A stretch of DNA of 64,000 bases from Stegostoma tigrinum (lineage: Eukaryota), in contig NC_081365.1 in the NCBI RefSeq assembly GCF_030684315.1, positions 39,027,830 through 39,091,829 on the forward strand, given 5' to 3'. The notes under the pieces were generated by a model. That model saw only the letters and a program-made list of their open reading frames with translations. It did not search any database and had not been told where the DNA came from. This document shows positions 6,455 to 64,000 of this stretch, in pieces. A program made the position numbers and the translations under genes. Each line of letters opens with the position of its first letter. Within the stretch, counting starts at the first letter, position 1.

Positions 6455-9400
6455 AGGAACAGATTGGGAGCTGGATTTTGGAAAGGAGCAGAAGTAATAG
6501 GGTTGTTGTTATGGGTGACTTCAACTTCCCTAATATCGATTGTAGTTTCCAAGTGCAAATAGTTTGGATGGGGCAAGTTTTTGTCAGGTCAGTCCAGGAA
6601 GGATTTCTGACCCAATACGTAGATAGGCCGACTAGAGGGGAGGCCATATTGGATTTGGTGCTTGGCAACAAAACAGGCCGGGTGTCAGGTCTCTCGATGT
6701 TAGATCATGACAGTGATAGTGATCACAACTCCCTGACTTTTACTATAGTCATGGAGAGGGATAGGAGCAGACGGTATGGGAAAGTATTTAATTGGGGAGG
6801 GGGAATTATCATGCTATTAGGCAAGAACTACACTCCATAGATTGGGAACAGATGTTCTCAGGGAAATGCACAACGGAAATGTGGAGGTTGTTCAGGGAGC
6901 AGTTGCTATGAGTGCTGGATAGGTTTGTCCCATTGAGGCAAGGAAAGGACGGTAAGGTGTAAGAGCCTTGGATGACAAGACATGTGGAACAACTTGTCAA
7001 AATGAAGAAGGAAGCTTACTTAAGGTTGAGGAAGCAAGGATCAGACAGGGCTCCCAAGGTAGCCAGGAAGGAAATGAAGAATGGGCTTAGGAGAGCTAGA
7101 AGGGGGTATGAAAAAACCTTGGAAGGTAGGATTAAGGAAAACCCCACGGCATTCCATGCTAATGTGAGGAACAAGAGGATGGCTCGAGTGGGGGTAGAGC
7201 CAATCAGCGATGTAGGGGGTCTTTTCAAACTCTGAAAGACACACCACGAGGACGGGAGTATTGCTTCAGCAGAAGAACTTCTTTATTCACGCTTGCAATT
7301 GATTACAGCGTGGAGAGCTCCAAGGCACAGTCACACAGGATGGTCAGGGAGAGTCTGAACATGTTGGACAATCCCTGACATTTTATGGCTTTACAAAGCA
7401 TGAGTAATTTCTAACTATGTCATCTCTGGTCATGAATCTGTCTCTATCTTTGTTCCCCATCTGTCTGTTTTTCTGACCCTTGATCATGATATGGCCTAAT
7501 GTTATTATACTATCAGGTTAACATAGATGAAGATCTACCTCCTTCGCTAATCATGTCAATGTTCCTATTTTGTTTGCTAACAAGGGCATTGTTTTCATGC
7601 AAGATAGAGTACTGTCATGTGCTTGTGGATATCAACTTCCCTGTTATTTTGTTACACTTGTATAACGATCTTGTTGCTACGTCAGCACAGGTGGATGTGT
7701 TATCTTGGTCCCATGGTTTGTAATTTATTTAACAAAATGCTGATGAGTTCATTTGGGCCTGTTTAGCTGTCTTCCTTCTTATTCATTTCAATGGTGTCTC
7801 TATCCCTTCCCTTCTCCCCCAGGTGTGGCGTAAGTTACATACGGGTTTGTGCATAATACCATGAAGCCTCAGAGTTAGATGATGGTGTTGGAGTCAGAGG
7901 AGGTCCTTAAGGAATACATTGTTTCAGTATTCACTAGTTGGAGGGATCTTGATGTTTGTAAGAACAGCATGAAACAGGCTGATATGCTCAAACAGGTTGA
8001 TGTTAAGAAGGAGGACATGCTAGAAGTTTTGTAAAACATGAGAATAGATAAGTCCCCTGGGCCAAATGGGATATATCCAAGGTTGCTACAGGATGTGAGG
8101 GAAGAGATTGCTGTGCCTTTGGCGATGTTCTTTGCATCCTCACTGTCTTCTGGAGTGATACCAGATGATTGGAGGATGGCAAATGTTATTCCATTGTTCA
8201 GGAAAGGCAATAGGGATAATCCTGGGAATTACAGAGCAGTCAGTGTTACTTCTGCGGTAGGCAAATTATTGGAGACGATTCTGAGAGATAGTATTTATGA
8301 TTATTTGGAAAAGCAGTTTGATTAGAAATAGTCAGCATGTCTTTGTGAGAGGCAAATATGCCTCACAGGCCTTATTGAATTCTTTGAATATGTGCCAAAA
8401 CACATTGATGAAGGCAGAGCAGTGGATGTAGTGTATATGGATTTTAGCGAAGCATTTGATAATGTTCTGCATGGTGAGCTCATTCAGAAAGTAAGGAGGC
8501 ATCGGATTCAGAGAAACTTGGCTGTCTGGATATAGAATTGGCTGTCCAATGGAAGACAGAGGGTGATAGTAGATTAAAAGTATTCAGCTTAGAGTCGATG
8601 ACCAGTGGTATGCTGCAGGGATCTGTTCTGGAATCTCTGCTCTTTGTGATCTTTATAAATGACTTGGATGCATAAGGAGACATGTGAGTTAGTAAGTTTG
8701 CTAATGACACAAAGGTTGGTGGAGTTATGGATAGTATGGAGGGCTGTTGTAGGTTGCAATGGGACATTGACAGGATGTAGAACTGGGCAAAGAAGTGGCA
8801 GATGGAATTCAACCCAGAAAAGTGTGAAATGATTCATTTTGGAAGGTCAAATTTGAATGCAGAATACAGGGTTAATGGCAGAATTCTTGGCAGTGTAGAG
8901 GAATATAGGAATCTTGGGGTGCACATCCACAGATCCCTCAAAGTTGCTACCCAAGTTGATAGGGTTGTTAAGAAGGCGTATGGTGTGTTGGCTTTCATTG
9001 GCAGGGGAATTGAGTTTAAGAGCTGTGAGGTTATGCAGCAGCTCTATAAAATCTGGTTAGACAACACTTGGAATATTGTGTTCAGTTCTGTTCACCTTAT
9101 TATAGGAAGGATGTGGAAACTTTCAAGAGGGTGCAGAGGAGATTTACCAGGATGCTGCCTGGACTGGAGGGCAGCTCTTATGAGGAAAGGTTGAGGGAGT
9201 TACAGCTCTTCTCATTGGAGTGAAGAAGGATGAGAGTTAACTTGATAGAGGTGTACAAGATAATGAGAGACATTGGTAGAGTGGATAGCCAGAGACCTTT
9301 ACCCAGGGCGGAAATGACTATTAGGAGGGGACATAATTTTAAGGTGATTGGAGGAAGGTATCGGGGAGTTGTCAGAGGTAGGTTCTTTGCTCAGAGAGTG

Positions 9401-19330: not shown

Positions 19331-19800
19331 ACACTTAGCCCACTTAATGTTTTTGAGAAGATTTGTAGCTTGGGCTAGGTAACATCATCAGTGTGCCTCT
19401 GGTGAAGCGTTGGTGTTCTGTCCCATCTGTTATGTATATGCATCGGTTTGCTGGGGTGGTTGGTATTAATTCTGGTTTTGTTTCTCAGTGGTTTGTACAC
19501 AGGGTCAAATTCAATGTGTTTGTTGATGGAGTTCCAATTGGAATACCAGGTCTCCAGGAATTTGAGCCAAACAGAGACACGCCAGGGAATTTCTGTACAG
19601 CCTGTACACAAACCACTCAGAAACAAAACTGGAAGTAACACCAACCACCCCAGCAAACCGAGGCGTATAAATAACAATAGGGACAGAACACTGACGCTTC
19701 ACCAGAGGCACACTTGATGATGTTACCTAGCACGGTGATGAAAGGCTTGCAGCCAAACCCAACAGCTCGGTAAGCATGTCCACAATCACATTTAGCCCAC
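19331..19800. mobile_element. Penelope-like element (family A relative), inverted-arm insertion with ORF C-terminus
   Basis: Minus-strand peptide KFLETWYSNWNSINKHIEFDPVYKPLRNKT (PLE GIY-YIG C-terminal region) and inverted arms. Decayed hammerhead CTGATGATGTTACCTAG. The 13-bp direct repeat ACACTTAGCCCAC/ACATTTAGCCCAC lies at 19331-19343 and 19788-19800. Confidence 0.75.
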
Positions 19801-20180: not shown

Positions 20181-21179
20181 AGATGAGAGTCACCTGCTTT
20201 TCAGCCCTTCTGCTAATGAACTCAGTTTCTGTGGATCTACTCTGCTCAGGCATCTCATGATTAAATAGCTGCTCAAAAATCTGTCTTCATACCTCCCGAG
20301 TAGACCAGCCCCCCGCTTTACCATCAGTTTGTCACCCTGGAACCATTCTGGTAAACCTTTTCTGTATCCTCTCCACACCGTCATAACTTTCCTGACGTGT
20401 AATTCCCCGAATTAGATATAGTACTCCAGTTGAGGTGGAATTGGTGATTTATAAAAGTTTCTTGTGGAATCTTTCTTTTCTAGTCAATACATTGGCAAAT
20501 ATTTGAAACACCTATTAGTGACTTTCTCAGCTCTCGTGCTATCTCAAACAATTTGCACCCTCTCCCCCTGAAATGTATCCTTTGGAAATGTATCCTTTAT
20601 TTTATACTTCCTTTTCTCATGTTCAGACCATAATGTATAATTCCATATCTCCCAACAGTAAATTCATCTGTCACATGTCAGTCTAATCTACCAGCTTGTC
20701 TATGCTTTCTGCAGGTTTATCATTGCCCTCTTCACAGTTCACTATTATATATTTTGAATAATATGCAAAATTTAAAATAGTGTCCTACACACACGAATTT
20801 AGCTAGCGAGTTTTGAGAAGATTTGTAGCTCAGGTTGAGGTTCTGGATGTGAGTTTGCTCGCTGAGCTGGAAGGTTAGTTTTCAGACATTTCGTCACTTT
20901 TTTTTAATATTGAAAAAATATACTTTATTCATAGAATGTACAAAAAATAAAACATTTATACGCCTACCCAGTCATGCAAGCCACTCCGGGTTACCCGGGG
21001 CTACATACACCAACTAAAGGAAAAAAAAAACAAAACAGAGAAAAAAAAACAAAGCAAAGAAACCGCCCCGGCAGTCGTCACCCCGCACAGTCCCATTTGG
21101 CCCCCTGACCAGTTGGGGAAGGCACCAGCTGGGCCCAGTTACCAGATAGGGCCCTTTTTTCTATTCTGGACGAGGGGTT

Positions 21180-24100
21180 TCATACCGTGGTCTTTCCCCA
21201 CCACACCTTGGCGGTGGCTGCCCCAAGCTTCAGCGCGTCCCTCAGCACGTAGTCCTGGACCTTGGAGTGCGCCAGTCTGCAACACTCGGTCGGGGTCAGT
21301 TCTTTCAGCTGGCAGACCAGCAAGTTGCGGGCAGACCAAAGAGCGTCTTTCACCGCATTGATGGTCCTCCAGGTGCAGTTGATGTTGGTCTCGGTGTGCG
21401 TCCCGGGAAACAGCCCGTAGAGCACGGAGTCCCGCGTCACGGAGCTGCTCGGGACGAACCTCGACAAACACCACTGCATCCCCTTCCAGACCTCCTGCGC
21501 ATAGGCACACTCCAGAAGGAGGTGATCGACAGTCTCGTCCCCCCCGCAGCCACCTCGAGGGCAGCGTGCGGTGGTGCAGAGATTCCGGGCATGCATAAAG
21601 GATCTCACTGGCAGAGCCCCTCTCACCGCCAGCCAAGCAATGTCCTTGTGCTTGTTTGAAAGTTCTGGAGATGAGGCATTCTGCCAAACGACTTTGGCAG
21701 TCTGCGTGGGGAACCACACGACGGGATCCACCCTCTCCTTTTCCTGAAGGGTCTTAAGGATATTACGTGCTGACCACTGCCTGACAGCCTTGTGGTCAAA
21801 GGTGTTTCCTTTCAAAATTTCTCCACGAAGGACAGGTTGTACGGGACGGACCAAATACTCGGAGCGTTCCACGACAACAAGACCAGGCCCATCCTTCGCA
21901 ACACCGGGGACAGGTAGAACCTCAGTAAGTAGTGACACTTGGTGTTTGCGTACAGAGGATCTACGCACAGCTTGATGCAGCCACACACAAAGGTAGCCGT
22001 CAGGGCGAGGGTGGCGTTCGATACGCCCTTTCCCCCATTTCCCAGGTCTTTGTACATGGTGTCTCTGCGGACCCGGTCCATCCTCGACCCCCAAATGAAG
22101 TGGACGATGGCCCGGGTGACCGCAGTGGCGCAGGTCCAGGTAATAGGCCAGGCCTGCGCCACATACAACAGTACCAAAAGCCCCTCGCACCTGACAACCA
22201 GGTTCTTACCCGCGATGGAGAGGGACCGGAGCGTCCACCTGCCCAGCTTCTGCTTCAATTTGGAGATACGCTCCTCCCAAGTCTTAGTGCATGCCCCAGC
22301 TCCACCAAACCAAACATCCAGCACCTTCAGGTAGTCTGTCCTGACAGTGAAGGGGATGAAGGAGCGGTCGTCCCAGTTCCCGAAGAACATGACCTCGCTC
22401 TTACCCCTATTGACTTTGGCACCCGAGGCCAGTTCAAACTGGCCGCAGATGTCCAACAGCCTACTCACCGACCGACGATCGGTGCTGAAGACGGCGACAT
22501 CATCCATGTACAGGGAGGTCTTGACCTGAAGGCCTCCGCTGCCTGGGATAGTCACGCCCTTCAGGCTCACGTCCTTCCTGATGGAGGCGGCGAAGGGCTC
22601 CACACAGCACACGAACAAGGCAGGAGAAAGCGGGCAGCCCTGCCTAACTCCAGATCTAACAGGAAAACTGTCTGATTCCCACCCGTTGATCGAGACTGCG
22701 CTAACGATGTTGGCGTAGAGCAGCCGGATCCAATTGCGGATGCCCTCCCCGAACCCCAATTTGGAGAGGACCTCCCTCATGTAAGCATGAGAGACCCTGT
22801 CGAAGGCCTTCTCCTGGTCCAGGCTGACGAGGCAGGTGTCCACCCGCCTGTCCTGTACGTAGGCGATCGTATCCCTGATGAGCGCAAGGCTCTCAGCGAT
22901 CTTCCTGCCCGGCACAGCACAGGTTTGGTCAGGGTGAATCACCGACTCCAGGACAGACCTGACCCGGTTGGCAATGACCTTGGCCAGGATTTTGTAGTCC
23001 ACGTTCAAAAGTGAAATGGGACGCCAATTCTTAATTTCTTCCCTCTCCCCCTTCCTCTTGTAAATGAGGGTGATGATGCCCTTCCTCATGGACTTGCACA
23101 TTTCCCCTGCCCAAAGCGCACTATCGTACACCTCCAGCAGGTCCTGGCCGACCAGGCCCCACAGAGCAGAATACAGCTCGACCGGTAAGCCATCACTTCC
23201 GGGAGTCCTATTCCTCTGCAAGGACATGAGGGCTCTGGCCAGCTCGTCCAGGGATATCGGCCGGTCCAGCCACTCCCTCGTGCCGTCGTCTAAGACCTCC
23301 GTGATAGACGACAGGAACGACTCGGAGGCCATGCTGTCCGTGGGCTTCGTGTCGTACAGTCCGGCATAGAAGTTCTGATGATCCTCAAAACGTCGGGCCG
23401 AGACGACGTCACCGAGCCGTCGTCCTCCTTCAGCCGGCTAAGCACAGAGCACTCTTTGTGCACCTTCTGAAAGAAGAAACGCAAGCACGTCTCGTCCTGC
23501 TCCATGGAGCGGACCCTGGACCGGAAGATTATCCTGGAGGCCTCCGCGGCGAAGAGCGAGGCTAGCTGGCCCCTCACCTCGCGGAGGTCCTCCGTGACAT
23601 CAACCCCCATCAACTGCAGAAGGAGCAGGTTCTGCACCCTTTTCTGGAGTCGCGACAGCTTTCCCCGCCTCTCTCTTGCCTTCTGAACACCCTTGAGGAC
23701 AAAGAACCTCTTGATGTTCTCCTTCACCGTCTCCCACCAGTCGCCTGGAGACTCAAAGAGGGGTTTCACGGTTCTCCAACCGGTGTACTCCGTCTTAAGC
23801 TCCTCGACGTTCTCTGGGGTCAACAGAGTCGTGTTGAGCTTCCACGTCCCCTTGCCGGCCGGCTGGTCGTCCTGTAAGTGACAGTCGGCCAACAGGAGGC
23901 AGTGGTCAGAGAAGAACACCGGCTCGACACCAGTGGATCTGACCGAGAACGTCCGTGACACAAACAGGAAGTCTATCCTTGAGCGAATAGACCCGTCTGG
24001 CCGCGACCAGGTGTACCTCTGCTGCGCTCCGTCTGCAGGGGTGCTGAAGACGTCGAGCAGCTTGGCGTCCTTCACCGTGCCCATCAGGAATCTGGATGTG

Positions 24101-24599
24101 ACGTCCAGTTGAATCCCCCCACCCGCTGTCCCCACGCCGGATCTTCCATCTGCATCAATGATGTAGTTGAAGTCTCCGCCTAGGATGACCGGCCTGGACG
24201 TAGCCAGCAGGGGGGGAAGCCGCTGCAGGACGTCCAACCGCTCACTCCGTACCACTGGGGCGTACACGTTGATCAGCCTCAGGGGAGCATTCCTGTAGGT
24301 GATGTCAGCCACTAGGAGGCGCCCCCCCCCACCACCTCCTGAACTTGAGAGATGGTGAAGTTGTGCCCCCGCAGCAGAATAGCCAGGCCCAAGGAGCGAC
24401 AGTCGTTACCCCCCGACCAGATCGAAGGCCCACAGGTCCAGGCGCCGGACCATTTCCCGTACCTGCCGAGGTGCGGTATCCCGCACTCCTGCAGAAACAG
24501 GAGGTCCGCCTTGATGGTGGTCAGGTAGGCCAACGTGGACACACATCTCGCGGTTGACTTGACGCTGCGCACATTAATGCTCGCAATTCGTACCCCCAT
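21180..24599 (-). pseudogene. Tx1 copy L ORF2 (APE endonuclease, RT YMDD, C-terminal CCHC), frameshifted
   Basis: Split among ORFs 24312-24635, 23290-24312, 21812-23332 and 21180-22190. Motifs GGDFN, SRIDFL, FSDH, GVRQGCPLSP, YMDD and CPRGGCGGDETVDHLLLEC. Confidence 0.9.
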
Positions 24600-26037
24600 T
24601 GTGGGCAGTGACCGCAGTACCCTCCCCAAGTCCAAGGTCCAGCCCCTCCATCTGTCCCTTCATGCCCATTGCCCGGGCTAACTGCTAGACGCTTTCTGGG
24701 CTCAGGAAACCGTCTGTGCTGCCTTCCGGGTGGCATCCCCCCGCCAGGGGTGCGGAGGCAGGAGGGTCCGGCTCCGGATCAGGCTGGGGACGTGCTGTTT
24801 CCTCCTTCCCGCCTGGACGTTCCGGGGGGCCCTCCAGTGCTCCAGCGGCACTTGACTGGGTGTCGGAGTGAGCCTCAGGACGCCTCCCGTCACCTGGAAG
24901 CGGGGTGCTGCTTTCCTTCCCCCTCGAGACCTTTAACTTCTGCTTCGGTTGGGCCCTCTCCGAATCCTCCTCGTCAGAGGAGCTCTTATAGCCCCCCTGT
25001 AGCTGCCTCTTCCCTCCTGATTGTTGTGGTTCCTGGGCCCGTCGACGCACCTTCCTCCTCGCTTTCCGGACTGTAGTCCACTCCCCTGGGTTGCCTGTCG
25101 CCGCCTCCATTGGCTCCGGGTTGTCGGGGGGGATCGGAGCCTGCAGGGGTGCTTTGCTGGCCTCGGGCCCATCCTGCAGGGCTGGGCCCTCCTGCACGGC
25201 CTGGCCCTCCTGCACATTAGTGGGGTCCTTGCTGGGCCCTGGTGCCTTCCTCTCCTCCGGGGGGGCTGGCCCCGCATTTCCCCTGCCGGCGACCTGGGCG
25301 TAGGTGGTACCCCGCCGCGGGCATGCCCTATAGAAGTGGCCCGCTTCCCCGCAAAGGTTGCAGCTTCTCTCTCGTGGGCAATCCTTTGCCAGGTGTCCCT
25401 CCTCCCTGCAGTTCCTGCAGATGGTGACTTTGCAGTCGGCCGCCATGTGACCTGACCTACCACAGGCATGGCAGACTTTAGGTTGCCCTGCATAGGTCAG
25501 GTAGCCCCTGCTCCCGCCGATCGCGAAGCTGGACGGTGGGTGTGCGACATTCCCGTCTGCGCCCATCCTCAGCGTCACCTTGACCTGCCTCTTACTCATC
25601 CAGATGCCAAAGGGGTCCACGATGTCAGTTAGGTCCCCTTCCACCTTCACATACCTTCCGAGGAAGGTCAGGACATCAACTGCTGGCACATGCGGGTTGT
25701 ACATGTGTACAGTCACCATACGGCTCCTCTGTGCTGGCATCACAAACAGTGGGACAGCGGTCAATACAGAGAGGGGGCCCTCACCTCCTTTCTCCTTGAA
25801 AACCTCCAGGAAGCGCTCGCAAAGCTTGGCACTCCGGAAGGTCACATCGTAAAAACCCCCTCTGGGGAAATCCTGCAGGCGGTAAATGTCCGCAGCAGCA
25901 AACCCGCAACAGTCCAACAGGACCCTCTTCACGAAGAAGGTGCGGTCCACAGGTGCACCTTCATCCACCTTCTTTACAGAAACACGGATGGTGTTCCGGA
26001 CCCCCTGACCTGGGGCACGAGCACTTGCCGCAGCCAT
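24574..26037 (-). pseudogene. Tx1 copy L ORF1 (nucleic-acid binding, 3x CCHC; ZCCHC3-like)
   Basis: ATG at 26037. Knuckles CHACGRSGHMAADC, CRNCREEGHLAKDC and CNLCGEAGHFYRAC. CAG>TAG stop at 24685; the ancestral TAA is at 24574. Confidence 0.85.
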
Positions 26038-26236
26038 CGTTGCAGGTTGGCTGCTCCCCTGAACCAGCGTTAGGCCGAAGCCAGCATTAAGATCCACTGG
26101 TCGCGAGGGTGCACAGCCAACCCGACGTCCTCCTTTCACCTCCAACACAGCACTCTCGTCCTCTCGGTCCACAAGAGAGTGGGTCTTTATTGTGTTTGAG
26201 ATGTAAGCTGGTTCACTGAGCTGTAAGGTTTGTCCC

Positions 26237-26520
26237 CAGATGTTTCGTCACCATTCCAGGTAACATCAACAGTGAGCCTCCAACAAAGCGCTGGTGTTAT
26301 GTCCCGCTTTCTATTTATCTGGTTAGGTTTGCTTGGGTTGGTGATGTCATTTCCTGTTCTTTTTCTCAGAGGAAAAGAACAGGAAATGACATCACCAACA
26401 CAGGAAATGACATCACCAACCCAAGGAAACCTAACCAGATAAATAGAAAGCTGGACATAACACCAGTACTTTGTCGGAGGCTCACTGTTGATGTTACCTA
26501 GAATGGTGATGAAACGTCTG
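26237..26520. mobile_element. Central fold-back of PLE family A pLTR (ORF C-terminus plus two hammerhead motifs, both with core CTGTTGA)
   Basis: Near-identical to the empty element at 43433-43712. Encodes PLRKRTGNDITNPSKPNQINRKRD, homologous to the PLE C-terminus at 19375-19717. A 21-nt tandem duplication lies at 26380-26420. Confidence 0.85.
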
Positions 26521-26719
26521 GGAACAAACCGGCAAGCTCAGTGAACCAGCTTACATCTCGAACACAATAAAGACCCACTCTCTTGTGGACTGAGAGGAGG
26601 AGAGTGCAGTCTTGGAGGTGAAAGGAGGACGTCGGGTTGGCTGTGCACCCTTGCGACCAGTGGATCTTAATGCTGGCTTCGGCCTAACGCTGGTTCAGGG
26701 GAGCAGCCAACCTGCAACG

Positions 26720-28174
26720 ATGGCTGCGGCAAGTGCTCGTGCCCCAGGTCAGGGGGTCCGGAACACCATCCGTGTTTCCGTAAAGAAGGTGGATGAAGGT
26801 GCACCTGTGGACCGCACCTTCTTCGTGAAGAGGGTCCTGTTGGACTGTTGTGGGTTCGCTGCTGCGGACATTTACTGCCTGCAGGATTTCCCCGGAGGGG
26901 GTTTTTACGATGTGACCTTCCGGAGTGCCAAGCTTTGCGAGCGCTTCCTGGAGGTTTTCAAGGAGAAAGGAGGTGAGGGCCCCCTCTCTGTATTGACCGC
27001 TGTCCCACTGTTTGTGATGCCAGCACAGAGGAGCCGTATGGTGACTGTACACATGTACAACCCGCATGTGCCAGCAGTTGATGTCCTGACCTTCCTCGGA
27101 AGGTATGTGAAGGTGCAAGGGGACCTAACTGACATCGTGGACCCCTTTGGCATCTGGACGAGTAAGAGGCAGGTCAAGGTGACGCTGAGGATGGGCGCAG
27201 ACGGGAATGTCGCACACCCACCGTCCAGCTTCGCGATCGGCGGGAGCAGGGGCTACCTGACCTATGCAGGGCAACCTAAAGTCTGCCATGCCTGTGGTAG
27301 GTCAGGTCACATGGCGGCCGACTGCAAAATCACCATCTGCAGGGAGGAGGGACACCTTGCAAAGGATTGCCCACGAGAGAGAAGCTGCAACCTTTGCGGG
27401 GAAGCGGGCCACTTCTATAGGGTATGCCCGCGGCGGGGTACCACCTACGCCCAGGTCGCCGGCAGGGGTAATGCGGGGCCAGCCCCCCCGGAGGAGAGGA
27501 AGGCACCAGGGCCCAGCAAGGACCCCACTAATGTACAGGAGGGCCAGGCCGTGCAGGAGGGCCCAGCCCTGCAGGATGGGCCCGAGGCCAGCAAAGCACC
27601 CCTGCAGGCTCCGATCCCCCCCGACAACCCGGAGCCAATGGAGGCGGCGGCAGGCAACCCAGGGGAGTGGACTACAGTCCGGAAAGTGAGGAGGAAGGTG
27701 CGTCGACGGGCCCAGGAACCGCAACAATCAGGAGGGAAGAGGCAGCTACAGGGGGGCTATAAGAGCTCCTCTGACGAGGAGGATTCGGAGAGGGCCCACC
27801 CGAAGCAGAAGTTAAAGGTCTCGAGGGGGAAGGAAAGCAGCACCCCGCTTCCAGGTGACGGGAGGCGTCCTGAGGCTCACTCCGACACCCAGTCAAGTGC
27901 CGCTGGAGCACTGGAGGGCCCCCCGGAACTTCCAGGCGGGAAGGAGGAAACAGCACGTCCCCAGCCTGACCCGGAGCCGGACCCTCCTGCCTCCGCACCC
28001 CTGGCGGGGGGATGCCACCCGGAAGGCAGCACGGACGGTTTCCTGAGCCCAGAGAGCGTCCAGCAGTTAGCCCGGGCAATGGGCATGAAGGGACAGATGG
28101 AGGGGCTGGACCTTGGACCTGGGGAGGGTACTGCGGTCACTGCCCACAATGGGGGTACGAATTGCGAGCATTAA
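26720..28174 (+). CDS. Tx1 copy R ORF1 (484 aa, CCHC knuckles; second knuckle has a 3-codon deletion)
   Basis: Open frame from ATG 26720 (MAAASARAPG) to TAA 28174. Reads ITICREEGH versus VTICRNCREEGH in copy L. Confidence 0.85.
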   Translation: MAAASARAPGQGVRNTIRVSVKKVDEGAPVDRTFFVKRVLLDCCGFAAADIYCLQDFPGGGFYDVTFRSAKLCERFLEVFKEKGGEGPLSVLTAVPLFVMPAQRSRMVTVHMYNPHVPAVDVLTFLGRYVKVQGDLTDIVDPFGIWTSKRQVKVTLRMGADGNVAHPPSSFAIGGSRGYLTYAGQPKVCHACGRSGHMAADCKITICREEGHLAKDCPRERSCNLCGEAGHFYRVCPRRGTTYAQVAGRGNAGPAPPEERKAPGPSKDPTNVQEGQAVQEGPALQDGPEASKAPLQAPIPPDNPEPMEAAAGNPGEWTTVRKVRRKVRRRAQEPQQSGGKRQLQGGYKSSSDEEDSERAHPKQKLKVSRGKESSTPLPGDGRRPEAHSDTQSSAAGALEGPPELPGGKEETARPQPDPEPDPPASAPLAGGCHPEGSTDGFLSPESVQQLARAMGMKGQMEGLDLGPGEGTAVTAHNGGTNCEH

Positions 28175-31100
28175 TGTGCGCAGCGTCAAGTCAACCGCGA
28201 GATGTGTGTCCACGTTGGCCTACCTGACCACCATCAAGGCGGACCTCCTGTTTCTGCAGGAGTGCGGGATACCGCACCTCGGCAGGTACGGGAAACGGTC
28301 CGGCGCCTGGACCTGTGGGCCTTCGATCTGGTCGGGGGGTAACGACTGTCGCTCCTCGGGCCTGGCTATTCTGCTGCGGGGGCACAACTTCACCATCTCT
28401 CAAGTTCAGGAGGTGGTGGGGGGGTGCCTCCTAGTGGCTGACGTCACCTACAGGAACGCTCCCCTGAGGCTGATCAACGTGTACGCCCCAGTGGTACGGA
28501 GTGAGCGGTTGGACGTCCTGCAGCGGCTTCCACCCCTGCTGGCTACGTCCAGGCCGGTCATCCTAGGCGGAGACTTCAACTGCATCATTGATGCAGATGG
28601 AAGATCCGGCGTGGGGACAGCGGGTGGGGGGATTCAACTGGACGTCACGTCCAGATTCCTGATGGGCACGGTGAAGGACGCCAAGCTGCTCGACGTCTTC
28701 AGCACCCCTGCAGACGGAGCGCAGCAGAGGTACACCTGGTCGCGGCCAGACGGGTCTATCCGCTCAAGGATAGACTTCCTGTTTGTGTCACGGACGTTCT
28801 CGGTCAGATCCACCGGTGTCGAGCCGGTGTTCTTCTCTGACCACTGCCTCCTGTTGGCCGACTGTCACTTACAGGACGACCAGCCGGCCGGCAAGGGGAC
28901 GTGGAAGCTCAACACGACTCTGTTGACCCCAGAGAACGTCGAGGAGCTTAAGAGGGAGTACGCCGGTTGGAGAGCCGTGAAACCCCTCTTTGAGTCTCCA
29001 GGCGACTGGTGGCAGATGAAGGAGAACATCAAGAGGTTCTTTGTCCGCAAGGGTGCTCAGAAGGCAAGAGAGAGGCGGGGAAAGCTGTCGCGACTCCAGA
29101 AAAGGGTGCAGAACCTGCTCCTTCTGCAGTTGATGGGGGTCGATGTCACGGAGGACCTCCGCGAGGTGAGGGGCCAGCAAGCCTCGCTCTTCGCCGTGAA
29201 GGCCTCCAGGATAATCTTCCGGTCCAGGGTCCGCTCTGTGGAGCAGGACGAGACGTGCTCGCGTTTCTTCTTTCAGAAGGTGCACAAAGAGAGCTCTGTG
29301 CTTAGCCGGCTGAAGGAGGACGACGGCTCGGTGACGTCGTCTCGGCCCGACGTTTTGAGGATCATCAGATCCTTCTATGCCGGACTGTACGACACGAAGC
29401 CCACGGACAGCATGGCCTCCGAGTCGTTCCTGTCGTCTATCACGGAGGTCTTAGACGACGGCACGAGGGAGTGGCTGGACCGGCCGATATCCCTGGACGA
29501 GCTGGCCAGAGCCCTCAAGTCCTTGCAGAGGAATAGGACTCCCGGAAGCGGCCGCTTACCGGTCGAGCTGTATTCTGCTCTGTGGGGCCTGGTCGGCCAG
29601 GACCTGCTGGAGGTGTACGATAGTGCGCTTCGGGCAGGGGAAATGTGCAAGTCCATGAGGAAGGGCATCATCATCCTCATTTACAAGAGGAAGGGGGAGA
29701 GGGAAGAAATTAAGAATTGGCGTCCCATTTCACTTTTGAACGTGGACTACAAAATCCTGGCCAAGGTCATTGCCAACCGGGTCAGGTCTGTCCTGGAGTC
29801 GGTGATTCACCCTGACCAAACCTGTGCTGTGCCGGGCAGGAAGATCGCTGAGAGCCTCGCGCTCATCAGGGATACGATCGCCTACGTACAGGACAGGCGG
29901 GTGGACACCTGCCTCGTCAGCCTGGACCAGGAGACGGCCTTCGACAGGGTCTCTCATGCTTACATGAGGGACGTCCTCTCCAAATTAGGGTTCGGGGAGG
30001 GCATCCGCAATTGGATCCGGCTGCTTTACGCCAACATCGTTAGCGCAGTCTCGATCAACGGGTGGGAATCAGACAGTTTTCCTGTTAGATCTGGAGTCAG
30101 GCAGGGCTGCCCGCTCTCTCCTGCCTTGTTTGTGTGCTGTGTGGAGCCCTTCGCCGCCTCCATCAGGAAGGACGTGAGCCTGAAGGGCGTGACTATCCCA
30201 GGCAGCGGAGGCCTTCAGGTCAAGACCTCCCTGTACATGGATGATGTCACCGTCTTCTGCCCCGATCGTCGGTCGGTGAGTAGGCTGTTGGACATCTGCG
30301 GCCAGTTTGAACTGGCCTTGGGTGCCAAAGTCAATAGGGGTAAGAGCGAGGTCATGTTCTTCGGGAACTGGGACGACCGCTCCTTCATCCCCTTCACTGT
30401 CAGGACAGACTACCTGAAGGTGCTGGGTGTTTGGTTTGGTGGAGCTGGGCCATCCACTAAGACTTGGGAGAAGCGTATCGCCAAATTGAAGCAGAAGCTG
30501 GGCAGGTGGATGCTCCGGTCCCTCTCCATCGTGGGTAAGAACCTAGTTGTCATGTGCGAGGGGCTTTCGGTACTGTTGTATGTGGCGCAGGCCTGGCCTA
30601 TTCCCTGGACCTGCGCCGCTGCGGTCACCCGGGCCATCTTCCACTTCATTTGGGGGTCGAGGATGGACCGGGTCCGCAGGAACACCATGTACAAAGACCT
30701 GGGAAATGGGGGAAAGGGCGTACCGAACGCCACCCTCGCCCTGACGGCTACCTTTGTGTGTGGCTGCATCAAGCTGTGCGTCGATCCTCAGTACGCAAAC
30801 ACCAAGTGTCACTACTTACTGAGGTTCTACCTGTCCCCGGTGTTGCAAAGGATGGGCCTGGCCTCGTTGCCGCGGAACGCTCCGAGTAGTTGGACCGTTC
30901 CGTACCACCTGTCCTTCGTGGAGAAATTTTTGAAAGGAAACACCTTTGACCACAAGGCCGTCAGGCAGTGGTCAGCACATAGTATCCTCAGGACCCTTCG
31001 GGAAAAGGAGAGGGTGGATCCCGTCGTGTGGTTCCCCACGCAGACTGCCAAAGTCGTTTGCCAGAATGCCTCATCTCCAGAACTTTCAAACAAGCACGAA

Positions 31101-31566
31101 GACATTGCTTGGCTGGCGGTGAGAGGGGCTCTGCCAGTGAGATCCTTTATGCATGCCCGGAATCTCTGCACCACCGCACGCTGCCCTCGAGGTGGCTGCG
31201 GGGGGGACGAGACTGTTGATCACCTCCTTCTGGAGTGTGCCTATGCGCAGGAGGTCTGGAGGGGGATGCAGTGGTATTTGTCGAGGTTCGTCCCGAGCAG
31301 CTCTGTGACACGGGACTCCATGCTCTACGGGCTGTTTCCGGGGACGCACACCGAGACCAACATCAACTGCGCCTGGAGGACCATCAATGCGGTGAAAGAC
31401 GCTCTTTGGTCTGCCCGCAACTTGCTGGTCTGCCAGCTGAAAGAACTGACCCCCGACCGAGTGTTGCAGACTGGCGCACTCCAAGGTCCAGGGCTACGTG
31501 CTGAGGGACGCGCTAAAGCTTGGGGCAGCCGCCGCCAAGGCGCGGTGGGGAAAGACCACCGTATGA
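28149..31566 (+). CDS. Tx1 copy R ORF2 (APE-RT-CCHC), open until a +1 frameshift at the C-run 31450-31454
   Basis: MGVRIASINVRSV start overlaps the ORF1 end by 26 nt. APE and RT (YMDD) motifs present. The ancestral end KTTV* (TGA 31564-31566) is seen by comparison with copy L. Confidence 0.9.
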
Positions 31567-32225
31567 GCCCCCTCGTCCAGGAAAGGGAAAAGAATCCTAT
31601 CTGGTAACTGGGCCCAGCTGGCGCCTTCCCCAACTGGTCAGGGGGCCAACTGGGACTGTGCGGGGTGACGACTGCCGGGGCGGTTTCTTTGCTTTGTTTT
31701 TTTTTTCCTTTAGTTGGTGTACGTACCCCTGGGTAACCCGGAGCGGCTTGCATGACTGGGTAGGTGTATAACTGTTTTATTTTTTGTACATTCTATGAAT
31801 AAAGTATATTTTTTCAAATAAAAAAAGATGATGAAACATCTGAAAACTAACCTTCCAGCTCAGCGAGCAAACTCACATCCAGAACTAATTTAGCTTTTCA
31901 ACACAAATCAAGAAAAACAATGGTGCTGACATTTACCCTTGGGAAACACCACTGCTGCCCAGAAAATTAGTATTCACCAGTATTCTGTTTCCTATCATTT
32001 AGTCAAGTTCAAAAGTCTGTCACATCACACTTTATCAAATGCATTTGGATAGCCACATATACCATATCAACTACATTAATCTCATCAACCTCTGTTGTTT
32101 CATCAAAAAACACAATGAAATTAGGCAAAAATATGTTGCCATAAATATTTAATATTATTCATTCATACTTGCATTTTCGTTTAGATTCAATCATGCGCAT
32201 TAAGAGGAAGAAAAAAAAAACTTAC

Positions 32226-34594: not shown

Positions 34595-34885
34595 CATAAC
34601 GAGGTGTAGAGCTGGATGAACACGGCAGGCCAGTAGCATCAGAGGGGCAGGAAAGCTGACATTTCAGATCTAGACCCTTCTTCAGAAAACTATCCAACAC
34701 CGTTTCAGCAAGAAGACAGGTACCTCAGGTATGTTCTACTCTTCCAAACATATACAAACAAGAAGTCCCAAAGGTTTTTGAAGAAGGGTCTCAGCTGAAA
34801 CGCCAGCTTTCCTGCTCCTCTGATGCTGCTTGGCCTGCTGTGTTCATCCAGATCTACACCTTGTTACCTCAGATTCTCCAGCATC
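34595..34885. mobile_element. PLE family B inverted termini enclosing an RT-like remnant
   Basis: Inverted arms. The spacer reads LPNIYKQEVP and LRPIV follows at ~34938, resembling the PLE RT motif LPKIHK..VP.LRPIV. Confidence 0.55.
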
Positions 34886-35817: not shown

Positions 35818-35845
35818 GACGTTTCGAGCCTAGACCCTTCTTCAG
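35818..35845 (-). ncRNA. Minimal type I hammerhead ribozyme motif
   Basis: CTGAAGA-A-GGGTCTAGGCTC-GAAA-CGTC. Confidence 0.7.
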
Positions 35846-36430: not shown

Positions 36431-36458
36431 CTGAAGAAGGGTCTAGGCCCGAAACGTC
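36431..36458 (+). ncRNA. Minimal type I hammerhead ribozyme motif
   Basis: CTGAAGA-A-GGGTCTAGGCCC-GAAA-CGTC, with a GUC cleavage triplet and a loopless stem III. Confidence 0.75.
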
Positions 36459-38620: not shown

Positions 38621-38872
38621 TGGTGTCTGTGACTGTGATAATGGGAACTGCAGATGCTGGAGAATCCAAGATAACAAAGTGTGGAGCTGGATGAACACAG
38701 CAGGCCAAGCAGCATCTCAGGAGCACAAAAGCTGATGTTTCGGGCCTAGACACTTCATCACCTCTCTGACGAAGGGTCTAGGCCCGAAACGTCAGCTTTT
38801 GTGCTCCTGAGATGCTGCTTGGCCTGCTGTGTTCATCCAGCTCCACACTTTGTTATCTTGGTGTCTGTGACT
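38621..38872. mobile_element. PLE family B hairpin insertion with 14-bp TSD
   Basis: TGGTGTCTGTGACT at 38621-38634 and 38859-38872, with near-perfect inverted arms around a ~6-nt loop. Confidence 0.85.
38766..38793 (+). ncRNA. Minimal type I hammerhead ribozyme motif
   Basis: CT-CTGACGA-A-GGGTCTAGGCCC-GAAA-CGTC-AG. Confidence 0.75.
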
Positions 38873-43419: not shown

Positions 43420-43725
43420 CCTCAAAAAAGTTAGCGAGTTTTGAGAAGATTTATAGCTCAGGTTAAGGTTCTGGATGTGAGTTTGCTCGCTGAGCTGGAA
43501 GGTTAGTTTTCAGACGTTTTGTCACCATTCTAGGTAACATCATCAGTGAGCCTCCGACGAAGCGCTGGTGTTATGTCCTGCTTTCTATTTATCTGAAAGT
43601 AGAAAGCGGGACATAACACCAGCGCTTCGTCGGAGGCTCACTGATGATGCTACCTAGGATGGTGATGAAATGTCTGAAAACTAACCTTCCAGCTCAGCGA
43701 GCAAACTCACATCCTCAAAAAAGTT
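43420..43725. mobile_element. PLE family A fold-back pLTR, uninterrupted (empty Tx1 target)
   Basis: Perfect 13-bp TSD CCTCAAAAAAGTT (43420-43432 and 43713-43725), inverted arms, and hammerhead motifs on both strands. Confidence 0.9.
43641..43674 (+). ncRNA. Hammerhead ribozyme motif, PLE family A (slightly decayed)
   Basis: TCA-CTGATGA-T-GCTACC-TAGGAT-GGTGAT-GAAA-TGTC-TGA. The consensus with the opposite arm is CTGATGA T GTTACC TAGAAT GGTGAC GAAA CGTC, with stem I TCA/TGA. Confidence 0.7.
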
Positions 43726-62639: not shown

Positions 62640-64000
62640 AAAGAACATAGAACATTGAACCGTACAGCAAGCCCTTCAGCCCATGATGTTGTGTGGAACT
62701 TTTACCCTAAACCTAAGGTCTATCTAATCTCCACCCTATCTTATACTATCATTCATATGCCTATCTAGTAGCCACCTAAATGCCCCTAATGAGGCCGACT
62801 CCTCTACCCTCTAATGCATTCCATGCCCCTACCATTCTCTGAGTAAAGAATCTACCTCTGATATCTGCCCTATATCTACCTCCACTCACTTTAAAACTAT
62901 GTCCCCTTGTAATAGCTACCTCCACCCTAGGAAAAAGTTTCTGGCTGTCTACTCTATCTATACCTATGATCATTTTATACACCTCCATCAAGTCACCTTC
63001 AAAAGAGAAAAGCCCTAGTTGTCTCAGCCTTTCCTTGTAAGACCTTCCCTCCATTCCAGGCAACATTCTGGTAAATCTCCTCTGCCCCTTTTTCAATTCT
63101 TCCATATCTTTCCTGTAATGAGGCAACCAGAACTGGACACAATACTCCACATGTGGCTGAACCAGGGTTTTGTTAAGCTGGAGCATGACTTCACGGCTCT
63201 TGAACGCAATCTCTCTATTAATGAAAGCTAACACACCATATGCCTTCTTAACAACTCTATCCACCTGGGTGGCATCTTTCAGTGAACAGTGAACCCTGAG
63301 ATCCCTCTGCTCTTCCACACTGCCAAGAATCATTCCGTTAACTCTGTATTCTGCTTTCAATTTTGTCCCTCTAAAATGGAACACCTCACACTTTTCAGGG
63401 TTAACTCCATCTGGCACTTCTCAGCCAAGCTCTGCATCCTATCAATGTCCCTTTGTAACCTGGAACAGCCCTCCGCAATACCACAACTCGACCCACCTTC
63501 GTATTGTCCGTGAACTTACTAATCCACGCTTCCACTCCTACGTCCAAACCATTTACAAAAATCACAAATAGAAGAGAACTCAGAACAGATCCTTGTGGTA
63601 CACCACTCGTAACTGAGCACCATGTTGAATATTTTCTGTCCACTACCACACTTTGTCTTCTAAGGGTCAGCCAATTCTGAATCCAATCTGCCACATTTTC
63701 CCCTATCCCATGCCTCCTTACTTTCTGCATGAGCCAACCATGGGGAACCTTATCAAATGCCTTACTTAAATCCATGTATATCACATCCACTGCTCTACCC
63801 TCATCCATGTGTTTGGTCACTTCTTCAAAGAATTCAGCAAGGTTTGTGAGGCATGATTTACCCCTCACAAATCCATGCTGACTATTACAAATCAAACTAT
63901 GCTCTTCTAAGTGATCATAAATCCTAACTCTAAGAACCCTTTCCAATAATTTGCTCACCACTGACGTAAGACTAATTGGCCTGTAATTCCCAGGGTTATC
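62640..64000 (-). mobile_element. CR1 RT and 3' end, continues beyond the window
   Basis: ORFs 63401-63961 (SQHGF, GVPQGSVL) and 62776-63417; tail GAACATAGAACA at ~62643. Confidence 0.9.

What the first reader, a model, noticed from the sequence alone, without database searches (positions are those of the whole stretch)
20796..31895. Tx1 retrotransposons inserted site-specifically into Penelope hammerhead ribozymes
Seen: two full-length Tx1 elements (20898-26236 minus, 26521-31826 plus) each interrupt a PLE pLTR arm at the same position, inside the hammerhead motif. Each is bracketed by a duplicated 15-16-mer covering the stem II 3' strand, GAAA and the GUC cleavage site. Copy R: GGTGATGAAACGTCTG (26505-26520) and GATGATGAAACATCTG (31827-31842). 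Copy L, read on the minus strand: GGTGACGAAACATCTG (26252-26237) and GTGACGAAATGTCTG (20897-20883). Removing each Tx1 plus one repeat rebuilds the same fold-back pLTR structure as the empty element at 43420-43725, bounded by its own TSD AATTTAGCT. Established: Tx1-clade APE elements are often sequence-specific (Tx1L in Tx1D, Keno in U2 snRNA, Mutsu in 5S rDNA, Dewa in tRNA arrays), and PLE pLTRs encode minimal hammerheads. Inference: this family targets a ribozyme carried by another retroelement, which is a conserved, high-copy safe harbour. I do not know of a described Tx1 with this target.
Basis: partly seen in the sequence, partly recalled or inferred. Interest (0 to 1): 0.95.

Follow-up and report, generated by a model that had tools for sequence, protein, structure and literature searches.

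The report
Shark LINE targeting Penelope hammerhead motif
Two copies of an L1/Tx1-type jumping gene sit at the same nucleotide in the two mirror-image hammerhead-ribozyme motifs of one small Penelope-like element, which points to a LINE family that aims at another retroelement's ribozyme sequence, a target I found in no paper.

Summary
A roughly 430-bp fold-back retroelement (9-bp TSD AATTTAGCT) carries one 5.3-kb LINE in each arm. Both lie in hammerhead-sense orientation at the mirror-equivalent site, and each is bracketed by a 15-16-bp repeat of GGTGAYGAAAYRTCTG. An empty copy lies at 43433-43716.

The LINE has an ORF1 with two RRMs and CCHC knuckles, and an ORF2 with APE, RT and zf-RVT. It belongs to the L1 group. 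Tx1-clade placement could not be tested because no labelled reference was available.

The target meets every sequence feature of Penelope minimal hammerheads, and it shows the Penelope signature of an optional tail of about 35 nt. No Rfam hammerhead model matches it.

The LINE's first 43 nt are an in-register, diverged copy of the Penelope sequence from the target site to the tail-less Penelope 3' end. This rebuilds helix I across the 5' junction.

Read contigs show a very abundant LINE family, many empty sites, and no cluster of differing 3' flanks.

Whether the two copies are independent insertions stays open (about 65:35 in favour).

Ribozyme processing of LINE RNA is untested, and both upstream cores at this locus are mutated (A6U).

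The scan has already noted the same association at other loci of this genome, including two follow-ups.

Verdict: a real, apparently undescribed target specificity.

The parts
20796..20804 (.). Left copy of the 9-bp target-site duplication AATTTAGCT of the fold-back Penelope-like element
   Evidence: Direct reading. It matches 31887-31895 exactly.
20805..20882 (-). Left outer arm. This is the Penelope-like 3' segment downstream of the target site, and it includes the optional tail of about 35 nt (…CCTCAACCTGAGCTACAAATCTTCTCAAAACTCGCT).
   Evidence: 95.7% identical to the empty element. The tail continuation is seen in 69-114 contigs as the loose end behind 31885.
20883..20897 (-). 3' copy of the LINE L target-site duplication, GTGACGAAATGTCTG
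20898..26236 (-). LINE copy L. It is full length but broken, with four frameshifting indels and one stop relative to R. It keeps the third CCHC knuckle.
26237..26252 (-). 5' copy of the LINE L target-site duplication, GGTGACGAAACATCTG
26253..26363 (-). Left inner arm. This is the Penelope-like sequence upstream of the target and includes the box CTGTTGA (A6 changed to U) and the helix II 5' strand GTTACC.
   Evidence: The longer parent element continues beyond 26373 in 46-56 contigs.
26364..26372 (.). 9-nt loop (TCTCAGAGG) at the centre of the fold-back
   Evidence: Direct reading.
26373..26504 (+). Right inner arm, with a 21-nt tandem duplication (26379-26399 and 26400-26420), the box CTGTTGA and the helix II 5' strand
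   Evidence: The arms are 94.3% identical.
26505..26520 (+). 5' copy of the LINE R target-site duplication, GGTGATGAAACGTCTG. It covers the helix II 3' strand, GAAA, the ACGU palindrome, the GUC cleavage site and 2 further nt.
26521..26563 (+). LINE leader. It is an in-register, diverged copy (about 70% identical) of Penelope nt 2-43 downstream of the target, and it ends where tail-less Penelope copies end. With CUCA upstream it gives a 4-bp helix I.
   Evidence: Local alignment was reached by 0 of 2000 shuffles.
26720..28174 (+). ORF1 of LINE R, 484 aa from the first ATG. It has two ZCCHC3-type RNA-binding domains and two CCHC knuckles. The middle knuckle was lost through a 9-nt deletion.
   Evidence: Pfam E-values 1.6e-27, 2.2e-19 and 7.9e-11.
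28149..31607 (+). ORF2 of LINE R, 1152 aa, with APE endonuclease, reverse transcriptase (YMDD) and zf-RVT. It is open, but it deviates from conserved residues at 14 or more positions.
   Evidence: (L1 ORF2p, 2.4e-72).
31608..31826 (+). 3' UTR and A-rich tail of LINE R
31827..31842 (+). 3' copy of the LINE R target-site duplication, GATGATGAAACATCTG
   Evidence: Empty-site contigs join here: the loose end before 31829 reads …CTGATGATGTTACCTAGAATGG.
31843..31886 (+). Right outer arm, which is the tail-less Penelope 3' end
   Evidence: 42 of 42 positions are identical to the left outer arm.
31887..31895 (.). Right copy of the 9-bp TSD AATTTAGCT
43433..43716 (.). Empty fold-back copy of the same Penelope-like family, used as the unoccupied reference. 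Its right arm passes the minimal-hammerhead descriptor at 43641-43674. Its left arm has G12 changed to A.

Best explanation
An abundant L1-group (Tx1-like) LINE family of this shark genome integrates sequence-specifically into the DNA that encodes the minimal hammerhead motif of one Penelope-like element (PLE) family.

Inferred integration steps:
- The APE endonuclease nicks the bottom strand just 5' of GGTGAC, which is the helix II 3' strand.
- The A-rich tail is reverse transcribed from that nick.
- The top strand is cut 15-16 nt further on, 2 nt past the GUC cleavage site. This leaves the observed target-site duplication.

At this locus both arms of a pre-existing short fold-back PLE insertion were hit, most likely in two separate events.

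The LINE is always in hammerhead-sense orientation, and it begins with a 43-nt leader descended from the PLE sequence between the hammerhead cut site and the tail-less PLE 3' end. The leader could help join the 5' end by homology. It also restores helix I, so the upstream hammerhead is rebuilt across the junction. This could let PLE-driven read-through transcripts be trimmed to a LINE RNA, but that last step is a hypothesis.
For: Shown:
- Identical insertion point, within 1 nt, in both arms, each with a 15-16-bp TSD and an A-rich 3' end.
- An empty reference copy in the window, plus 46, 32 and 6 empty-site contigs in three read sets from two species.
- The LINE protein domains.
- The target fits the PLE min-HHR features of PMC4209133. 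These are CUGAUGA, an extra U between positions 9 and 10.1, a G10.1-C11.1 pair, a 6-bp helix II, no helix III, and palindromic C15.2-G16.2.
- My descriptor finds 6 such motifs in the window against 0.03 expected.
- The PLE 'optional 30-40 bp tail' signature of PMC11167929 is present. One arm of each fold-back has it and the other lacks it, and both forms are abundant in contigs.
- Leader homology is in register, with 0 of 2000 shuffles reaching the score.
- The folds of three of the four arm or junction sequences tested (both LINE junctions and one arm of the empty copy) keep helix II, and at the two junctions a 4-bp helix I.
- The LINE is very abundant. Its summed word depth is about 1e6, against 85 for a unique-flank contig. 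No cluster of loose ends appears behind the LINE's 3' end, although low-agreement clusters are listed elsewhere.
- Five hammerhead motifs of a second family in the window (GGCCCGAAACGTC) are all unoccupied.

For two separate events at this locus:
- The fold-back without the LINEs has arms of ordinary size, about 230 nt, like the other fold-backs in the window.
- The 3' junctions differ (A8-GTGACG against A7-GATGATG).
- The leaders differ by a 4-nt block, and the L type is seen in 6 other contigs.

Known Tx1 families target other transposons with 16-bp TSDs (PMC4494074).
Against: - L and R share minority family variants.
- They look equally old. CpG decay is 33 in L against 20 in R (p=0.10). 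Deviations from conserved residues number 7 in L and 14 in R. One insertion copied to the other arm is therefore not excluded.
- The read laying tables are truncated, and de Bruijn contigs break at repeats. The genome-wide share of copies in this target was therefore not counted.
- No Rfam hammerhead model matches.
- No PLE RT or GIY-YIG ORF lies in the window.
- No labelled Tx1 reference could be obtained.

Against ribozyme processing:
- Both upstream cores here read CUGUUGA.
- Metazoan min-HHRs cleave poorly and only as dimers (PMC4209133).
- No RNA-seq reads end at the hammerhead site of an Anolis PLE (PMC11167929).
- No RNA run holding this sequence was found.
Confidence: 0.72

Rival explanations
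1. There was only one LINE insertion at this locus. The second copy arose by copying. One route is arm-to-arm repair or gene conversion within the inverted repeat, possibly after the LINE endonuclease cut the empty arm. The other route is that the whole 11-kb palindrome formed in one Penelope-type integration of a chimeric PLE-LINE-PLE RNA. The family could still be site-specific, but this locus would then count as one event, not two.
For: - Divergence is uniform across arms and LINEs. The LINEs are 97.3% identical, the inner arms 94.3% and the outer arms 100%.
- The copies are of similar age.
- L and R share family variants with frequencies of 1-30%.
- Fold-backs with a hairpin-like centre and one TSD are how this PLE family integrates.
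- A PLE protein cleaves and extends both target strands (PMC11167929).
Against: - Formation in one integration would need two cDNAs, or a snap-back, of 5.6 kb. The other fold-backs in the window turn round after 100-250 nt. The turn here lies only 137 nt past the LINE.
- The 3' junctions and tails differ by several events within 25 nt.
- The leaders differ by a 4-nt block that also exists in other copies.
- All four frameshifts lie in L.
Confidence: 0.3
2. The LINE has no target specificity of its own. A single chance insertion into a PLE created a composite unit. That unit then spread as cargo of the PLE machinery, so every copy has hammerhead flanks by descent.
For: - PLE arms and LINE have similar summed depth in the contigs.
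Against: - Each LINE has its own TSD and A-rich tail at the junction, and the junctions differ slightly.
- The LINE encodes its own APE and RT, and R is still open.
- The leader is 30% diverged from the flanking PLE while the TSD copies are near-identical. The leader therefore travels with the LINE and is not re-copied from each PLE.
- Empty arms are common.
Confidence: 0.07
3. The overlap with a ribozyme motif is incidental. The endonuclease simply recognises a 16-30-bp DNA word that happens to lie in a high-copy repeat. The leader is a fossil of a 5' transduction with no present function.
For: - Other Tx1 families target arbitrary sites in Mariner, piggyBac and LTR elements (PMC4494074).
- The hammerhead cores at this locus are dead, and most copies are CpG-decayed.
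- Hammerhead cleavage is dispensable for PLE insertion in vitro and is not seen in Anolis RNA-seq (PMC11167929).
Against: - The LINE is in hammerhead-sense orientation in both arms.
- The TSD ends 2 nt after the cleavage site.
- The leader spans exactly from there to the tail-less PLE 3' end and keeps or improves helix I pairing, 4 bp against 3 bp.
Confidence: 0.45

Closest known systems
Target-specific Tx1-clade LINEs that aim at other transposons: Tx1L in Tx1D (piggyBac), Tx1-Mar in Mariner-N4_AMi, and Tx1-8_Crp/Tx1-4_AMi in LTR retrotransposons (Kojima 2015, PMC4494074)
   Same: An APE-type LINE inserts at one defined site of a multicopy transposon. The TSD is about 16 bp; the Mariner-N4_AMi TSD is 16 nt. 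Other agents of this scan report tandem arrays that sandwich a TSD at other loci.
   Different: The target is a Penelope-like element, specifically its hammerhead motif, and no paper I could search lists this target. The LINE carries a target-derived leader. Clade membership was not verified here.
R2 and other site-specific LINEs whose 5' end is released from a co-transcript by an HDV-like ribozyme (Eickbush & Eickbush 2010 and Ruminski et al. 2011, as cited in PMC4209133)
   Same: A site-specific LINE lies in sense orientation inside a transcribed multicopy target, with a self-cleaving ribozyme motif exactly at the 5' junction.
   Different: In R2 the ribozyme is HDV-like and encoded by the LINE itself, and the endonuclease is restriction-like. 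Here the catalytic core would come from the host retroelement, and only the substrate and helix I strand would come from the LINE. Cleavage is untested.
Minimal hammerheads of Penelope-like elements (Cervera & De la Peña 2014, PMC4209133), including pairs on opposite strands 100-700 bp apart
   Same: The target has the same boxes, the extra nucleotide after A9, the G10.1-C11.1 pair, a long helix II, no helix III and a palindromic 15.2-16.2. It occurs as an inverted pair.
   Different: No PLE ORF is linked to it in this window. Activity is unknown. Most copies here are mutated.
   Same: The strategy of inserting into conserved multicopy sequence.
   Different: Those targets are host genes or simple repeats, not a catalytic RNA motif of another retroelement.

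Membership tests
Tx1 clade of the L1 group of non-LTR retrotransposons | ORF2 with an N-terminal APE endonuclease followed by an L1-type reverse transcriptase | tested here: met
   Pfam Exo_endo_phos 2.9e-17, RVT_1 5e-38 and zf-RVT 1e-9. The best solved relative is L1 ORF2p at 2.4e-72, against R2 at 2.7e-15.
Tx1 clade of the L1 group of non-LTR retrotransposons | ORF1 with RNA-binding domain(s) plus CCHC zinc knuckles, rather than the coiled-coil/RRM/CTD type of mammalian L1. This criterion rests on my own knowledge. | tested here: met
   RBD_ZCCHC3_1st and RBD_ZCCHC3_2nd, zf-CCHC. R has two knuckles and L has three.
Tx1 clade of the L1 group of non-LTR retrotransposons | The RT domain groups with named Tx1 references, not L1, in a phylogeny | not testable with these tools
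   No labelled Tx1 sequence could be obtained. The nearest proteins are unnamed amphibian ORF2s at 44% identity. The atlas names were uninformative.
Tx1 clade of the L1 group of non-LTR retrotransposons | Target-sequence preference. Kojima's criterion is that the same target type appears in more than 20% of flanks. | tested here: inconclusive
   Two of two copies in the window meet it, and the contig evidence is compatible. No count of flanks across the genome was possible.
Penelope-like element minimal hammerhead (PMC4209133) | Catalytic boxes CUGANGA, GAAA and UH in type I order | tested here: met
   43641-43674 passes the descriptor. The empty-site contig consensus reads CTGATGATGTTACCTAGAATGG followed by TGAYGAAAC. 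The two copies next to the LINEs read CTGTTGA instead.
Penelope-like element minimal hammerhead (PMC4209133) | An unpaired nucleotide between A9 and 10.1, a G10.1-C11.1 pair, and a helix II of 6-8 bp | tested here: met
   CUGAUGA-U-GUUACC…GGUGAC. Helix II is in the minimum-energy fold of 3 of 4 copies.
Penelope-like element minimal hammerhead (PMC4209133) | No helix III, and palindromic positions 15.2-16.2, which implies dimeric action | tested here: met
   GAA-ACGU-C at 26511-26518. The other copies are CpG-decayed to ACAU or AUGU.
Penelope-like element minimal hammerhead (PMC4209133) | Match to a curated hammerhead covariance model | tested here: not met
   No Rfam hammerhead hit at gathering score or at E<=10. 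The 2014 authors also needed a special descriptor to find these motifs. That the Rfam models expect a helix III is my assumption.
Penelope-like element minimal hammerhead (PMC4209133) | Self-cleavage | not testable with these tools
   No RNA run was found. In vitro assay is needed.
Penelope-like element (PLE) | An optional 30-40-bp 3' tail that reflects two RT start sites (PMC11167929) | tested here: met
   The left arms end 34-40 nt further on than the right arms in both fold-backs. Contigs show the tail continuation (69-114 contigs) and also heterogeneous flanks at the tail-less end (117 contigs).
Penelope-like element (PLE) | Head-to-head inverted 5'-truncated copies within one variable-length TSD | tested here: met
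   The TSDs are 9 bp, 11-13 bp and 9 bp for the three fold-backs at 20.8, 43.4 and 19.3 kb.
Penelope-like element (PLE) | A linked ORF with a telomerase-like RT and a GIY-YIG endonuclease | tested here: not met
   No such ORF of 200 aa or more lies in the window. Contigs show the parent element is longer (loose end behind 26373), but I could not read it.

The most novel reading that the evidence does not exclude
The LINE uses a split hammerhead that is shared between two unrelated retroelements. The Penelope-like host supplies the promoter, the catalytic box and helix II. The LINE's TSD and leader supply the cleavage site and the helix I strand. Self-cleavage of read-through transcripts then defines the LINE RNA's 5' end. 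The family would therefore depend on its target both for a landing site and for RNA maturation.
Probability: 0.25. Interest if true: 0.85.

Novelty: new variant of a known kind. Interest (0 to 1): 0.66.

Why it matters
Target-specific LINEs show how mobile elements limit harm to the host, and their endonucleases are natural sequence-specific integration tools. A family that aims at the hammerhead motif of Penelope-like elements would add a new target class: a catalytic RNA gene of another retroelement. It would also give a case of nested parasitism between two retroelement classes at roughly 10^4-copy scale, judging from the summed contig depth. If the rebuilt hammerhead is used, it would be the first LINE found to borrow its 5'-processing ribozyme from its target instead of carrying one, as R2 does. 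That is directly testable with RNA 5'-end mapping and in vitro cleavage.

Tried and rejected
Searches that led nowhere:
- Rfam was run at gathering score on the whole window and at E<=10 on three sub-regions. It returned only generic hairpin (miRNA-type) hits and no hammerhead.
No other genomic copies could be fetched.
- A metagenome scan for a 24-mer of the 3' UTR gave 0 hits.
- The protein atlas and cluster names gave no Tx1 label. A second homologue search from a Xenopus relative did not surface a named Tx1 either.
- Pfam found nothing on the ORF at 62776-63417.

Arguments for independent insertion that I dropped after checking:
- The 9-nt indel at 27336 lies between 7-nt direct repeats. 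It is flanked by rare variants that L and R share, so it needs homoplasy under either model.
- The CGG indel at 29016 sits where contig depth collapses, so it may be private to R.
- The 1-nt indel at 31450 is in a C5 run.
- 'R is younger because its ORFs are open' fails. R deviates from conserved residues more often than L, 14 against 7.
- dN/dS of 0.38 (ORF1) and 0.74 (ORF2) is too close to neutral to decide once transition bias is allowed for.

Also rejected:
- The many 'joints' in read laying have sides of 20-23 nt and recurring end points. I treat them as repeat artefacts.

Full report
**What is in the sequence**

Positions 20796-31895 hold one composite element bounded by a perfect 9-bp direct repeat, AATTTAGCT. 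Reading inwards from either end, the order is as follows:
- a Penelope-like outer arm;
- a 15-16-bp repeat;
- a 5.3-kb LINE;
- the second copy of that repeat;
- a Penelope-like inner arm.

The two halves meet at a 9-nt loop at 26364-26372. The LINEs are L (20898-26236, minus strand) and R (26521-31826, plus strand). They are 97.3% identical. The degenerate word GGTGAYGAAAYRTCTG occurs 7 times in the window against 0.20 expected.

An unoccupied copy of the same fold-back lies at 43433-43716 with its own TSD. It aligns to the three non-LINE pieces of the composite at 83-98% identity.

**The inserts**

R has an ORF1 at 26720-28174 with two ZCCHC3-type RNA-binding domains and two CCHC knuckles. 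Its ORF2 at 28149-31607 has an APE endonuclease, a reverse transcriptase (YMDD) and a zf-RVT domain.

- Among solved structures the closest is L1 ORF2p (2.4e-72), far ahead of R2.
- The nearest database proteins are unnamed amphibian ORF2s at 44% identity. Chimeric Heterodontus francisci gene models match small parts of ORF2 (6-9% of its length) at 67-75%.
- I could not obtain a labelled Tx1 sequence. 'L1 group, Tx1-like by ORF1 type and behaviour' is what is shown, and clade membership is inferred.
- L is broken, with four frameshifting indels and one stop.
- R is open, but it deviates from residues conserved in 19 homologues at 14 positions, against 7 for L. R is probably not a pristine active copy.

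**The target**

No Rfam hammerhead model matches, even at E<=10 on short stretches. The sequence does meet each feature by which Cervera and De la Peña defined the minimal hammerheads of Penelope-like elements (PMC4209133):
- the box CUGAUGA;
- one unpaired nucleotide after A9;
- a G10.1-C11.1 pair closing a 6-bp helix II (GUUACC/GGUGAC);
- GAA;
- no helix III, with a palindromic A-CG-U;
- then C17.

A descriptor that I wrote from that description finds 6 motifs in the window against 0.03 in Markov shuffles. These are the empty copy's right arm and five members of a second family, CTGA[AC]GAAGGGTCTAGGCCCGAAACGTC. The same paper reports pairs of such motifs on opposite strands 100-700 bp apart, which is what these fold-backs are.

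A second, independent Penelope hallmark is also present. Frangieh et al. (PMC11167929) showed that a Penelope protein starts reverse transcription at two sites. This gives an optional 30-40-bp 'tail' in a fraction of genomic copies. They also showed that the protein cleaves and extends both target strands.

- In both fold-backs here, one arm ends 34-40 nt further on than the other.
- In the read contigs, both the tail continuation (69-114 contigs) and heterogeneous flanks at the tail-less end (117 contigs) are abundant.
- No Penelope ORF lies in the window. Contigs show that the parent element continues beyond the fold-back centre.

Most copies are CpG-decayed at the two CpGs of GACGAAACGTC. 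Both inner arms of the composite read CUGUUGA, so the ribozyme cores at this locus are dead.

**The leader**

BLAST with the empty element ran into the LINE's 5' end. The first 43 nt of the LINE align without gaps to nt 2-43 of the Penelope sequence that follows the target site, and no shuffle out of 2000 reached that score.

L and R share most of the leader's differences from the Penelope sequence, so the leader belongs to the LINE. The homology ends exactly where tail-less Penelope copies end (…CATCCAGAAC, as at 31885).

Read together, the 5' TSD copy and the leader are colinear with the Penelope segment from the helix II 3' strand to the tail-less 3' end. The simplest history is inferred: an ancestor lay just downstream of a tail-less Penelope copy, and its RNA began in or near the hammerhead.

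In the minimum-energy folds of the two junctions, helix II is kept and CUCA pairs with UGGG. That is a 4-bp helix I, against 3 bp in the native motif.

**Genome-wide evidence**

Four contig sets were laid on 26300-32000: two individuals of organism A, plus organisms B and C.

- The LINE is extremely abundant. Its summed word depth is about 1e6 in X1 and 5e5 in X2, against 85 and 19 for contigs that reach the unique flank. This is a rough guide only.
- The family is present in organism B, and more weakly in organism C.
- Empty sites are seen as loose ends before 31829 reading …CTGATGATGTTACCTAGAATGG (46, 32 and 6 contigs). They are also seen as a joint from 26520 to 31845.
- No cluster of loose ends appears behind the LINE's A-rich end, although low-agreement clusters of more than 100 contigs are listed at the Penelope 3' end.

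This fits a family whose 3' ends nearly always run into the same target.

Other readers of this scan noted the same association at eight or more other places in this genome. Two follow-up agents reported head-to-tail arrays at the same bond and a 39-nt leader. These are leads, not independent proof.

**One event or two at this locus**

For a single insertion that was later copied:
- Divergence is uniform across arms and LINEs.
- L and R share family variants of 1-30% frequency.
- They look equally old. CpG decay is 33 against 20, p=0.10, and conserved-residue deviations are 7 against 14.

For two insertions:
- Without the LINEs, the fold-back has arms of about 230 nt, like the others in the window. 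Making an 11-kb palindrome in one Penelope integration would need a 5.6-kb cDNA that turns round just 137 nt past the LINE.
- The 3' tails and junctions differ by several events within 25 nt.
- The leaders differ by a 4-nt block, CCTTAC against CCGGCA. The L form is seen in six other contigs.
- All four frameshifts lie in L.

Several indel arguments that first looked decisive did not survive inspection and are listed under Tried and rejected. I put two independent insertions at about 65%. Either way, at least one precise, TSD-flanked insertion into the motif occurred here. The leader argues for a long-standing association with this target.

**Mechanism**

Shown:
- the insertion point;
- the TSD;
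- the orientation;
- the leader homology;
- the protein domains.

Inferred:
- a bottom-strand nick 5' of GGTGAC;
- reverse transcription primed from the A-rich tail;
- a top-strand cut 15-16 nt downstream, 2 nt past GUC;
- 5' joining helped by leader-target homology, as described for co-transcribed site-specific LINEs (discussed in PMC4494074).

Hypothesis: Penelope-driven read-through transcripts are cut by the rebuilt hammerhead to give the LINE RNA's 5' end. Four points count against it:
- metazoan minimal hammerheads have low, dimer-dependent activity (PMC4209133);
- no reads end at the hammerhead site in Anolis RNA-seq, and cleavage is dispensable for insertion in vitro (PMC11167929);
- the cores at this locus are dead;
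- I found no RNA data for this sequence.

**Comparison and novelty**

Tx1-clade families that target other transposons are known. They include Tx1L in a piggyBac derivative, Tx1-Mar in Mariner-N4_AMi with a 16-nt TSD and tandem arrays, and others in LTR elements (PMC4494074). The kind is therefore known.

Seven full-text searches found no paper that links a Tx1 or any LINE to a Penelope or hammerhead target. Repbase and Dfam could not be checked.

The target class and the junction-spanning ribozyme geometry make this a new variant of a known kind. It works like R2 with its HDV-like ribozyme only if the cleavage hypothesis holds, and it is not a member of that family.

Noticed in passing
window 34658-34685 (-), 35818-35845 (-), 36431-36458 (+), 38766-38793 (+), 58482-58509 (-): A second family of minimal hammerhead motifs, CTGA[AC]GAAGGGTCTAGGCCCGAAACGTC. 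All have the extra nucleotide after A9. The copy at 38.7 kb sits at the centre of a roughly 140-bp hairpin repeat. None carries a LINE.
   Followed up: partly
window 19344-19791: A third, more diverged fold-back of the Penelope-like type, with the 9-bp TSD TTAGCCCAC (19335-19343 and 19792-19800). Its right arm reads CTTGATGATGTTACCTAGCACGGTGATGAAAGGCTTG. Its left arm lacks about 85 nt, including the 3' half of the hammerhead. No LINE is inserted.
   Followed up: partly
window 27336/27337 (R) and 25411-25419 (L): A 9-nt deletion between CTGCAGG repeats removes the middle CCHC knuckle of ORF1 in R. Contigs that align across the site in organism A lack these 9 nt, as R does (none of them shows the insertion; 18 contigs carry it as a clipped end). 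L and the contigs of organisms B and C keep the knuckle.
   Followed up: partly
window 26379-26420: A 21-nt tandem duplication (ACAGGAAATGACATCACCAAC, two copies) in the right inner arm, next to the palindrome centre.
   Followed up: no
window 30450-30454: Clustered changes private to R. Three substitutions within 5 nt turn a DG that is invariant in homologues into GR. This suggests a complex mutation event in R.
   Followed up: partly
window 63518-63988 (-), 58698-59009 (+), 8011-8532 (+): Weak tblastn matches (21-30% identity) to the RT part of ORF2. These are presumably remnants of other retroelement families.
   Followed up: no
one search runs X5, X10-X12: Other species hold the LINE at 11-43% of its 31-mers. 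In organism B the empty-site and tail contigs are the same as in organism A, so the LINE and its target family predate that split.
   Followed up: partly
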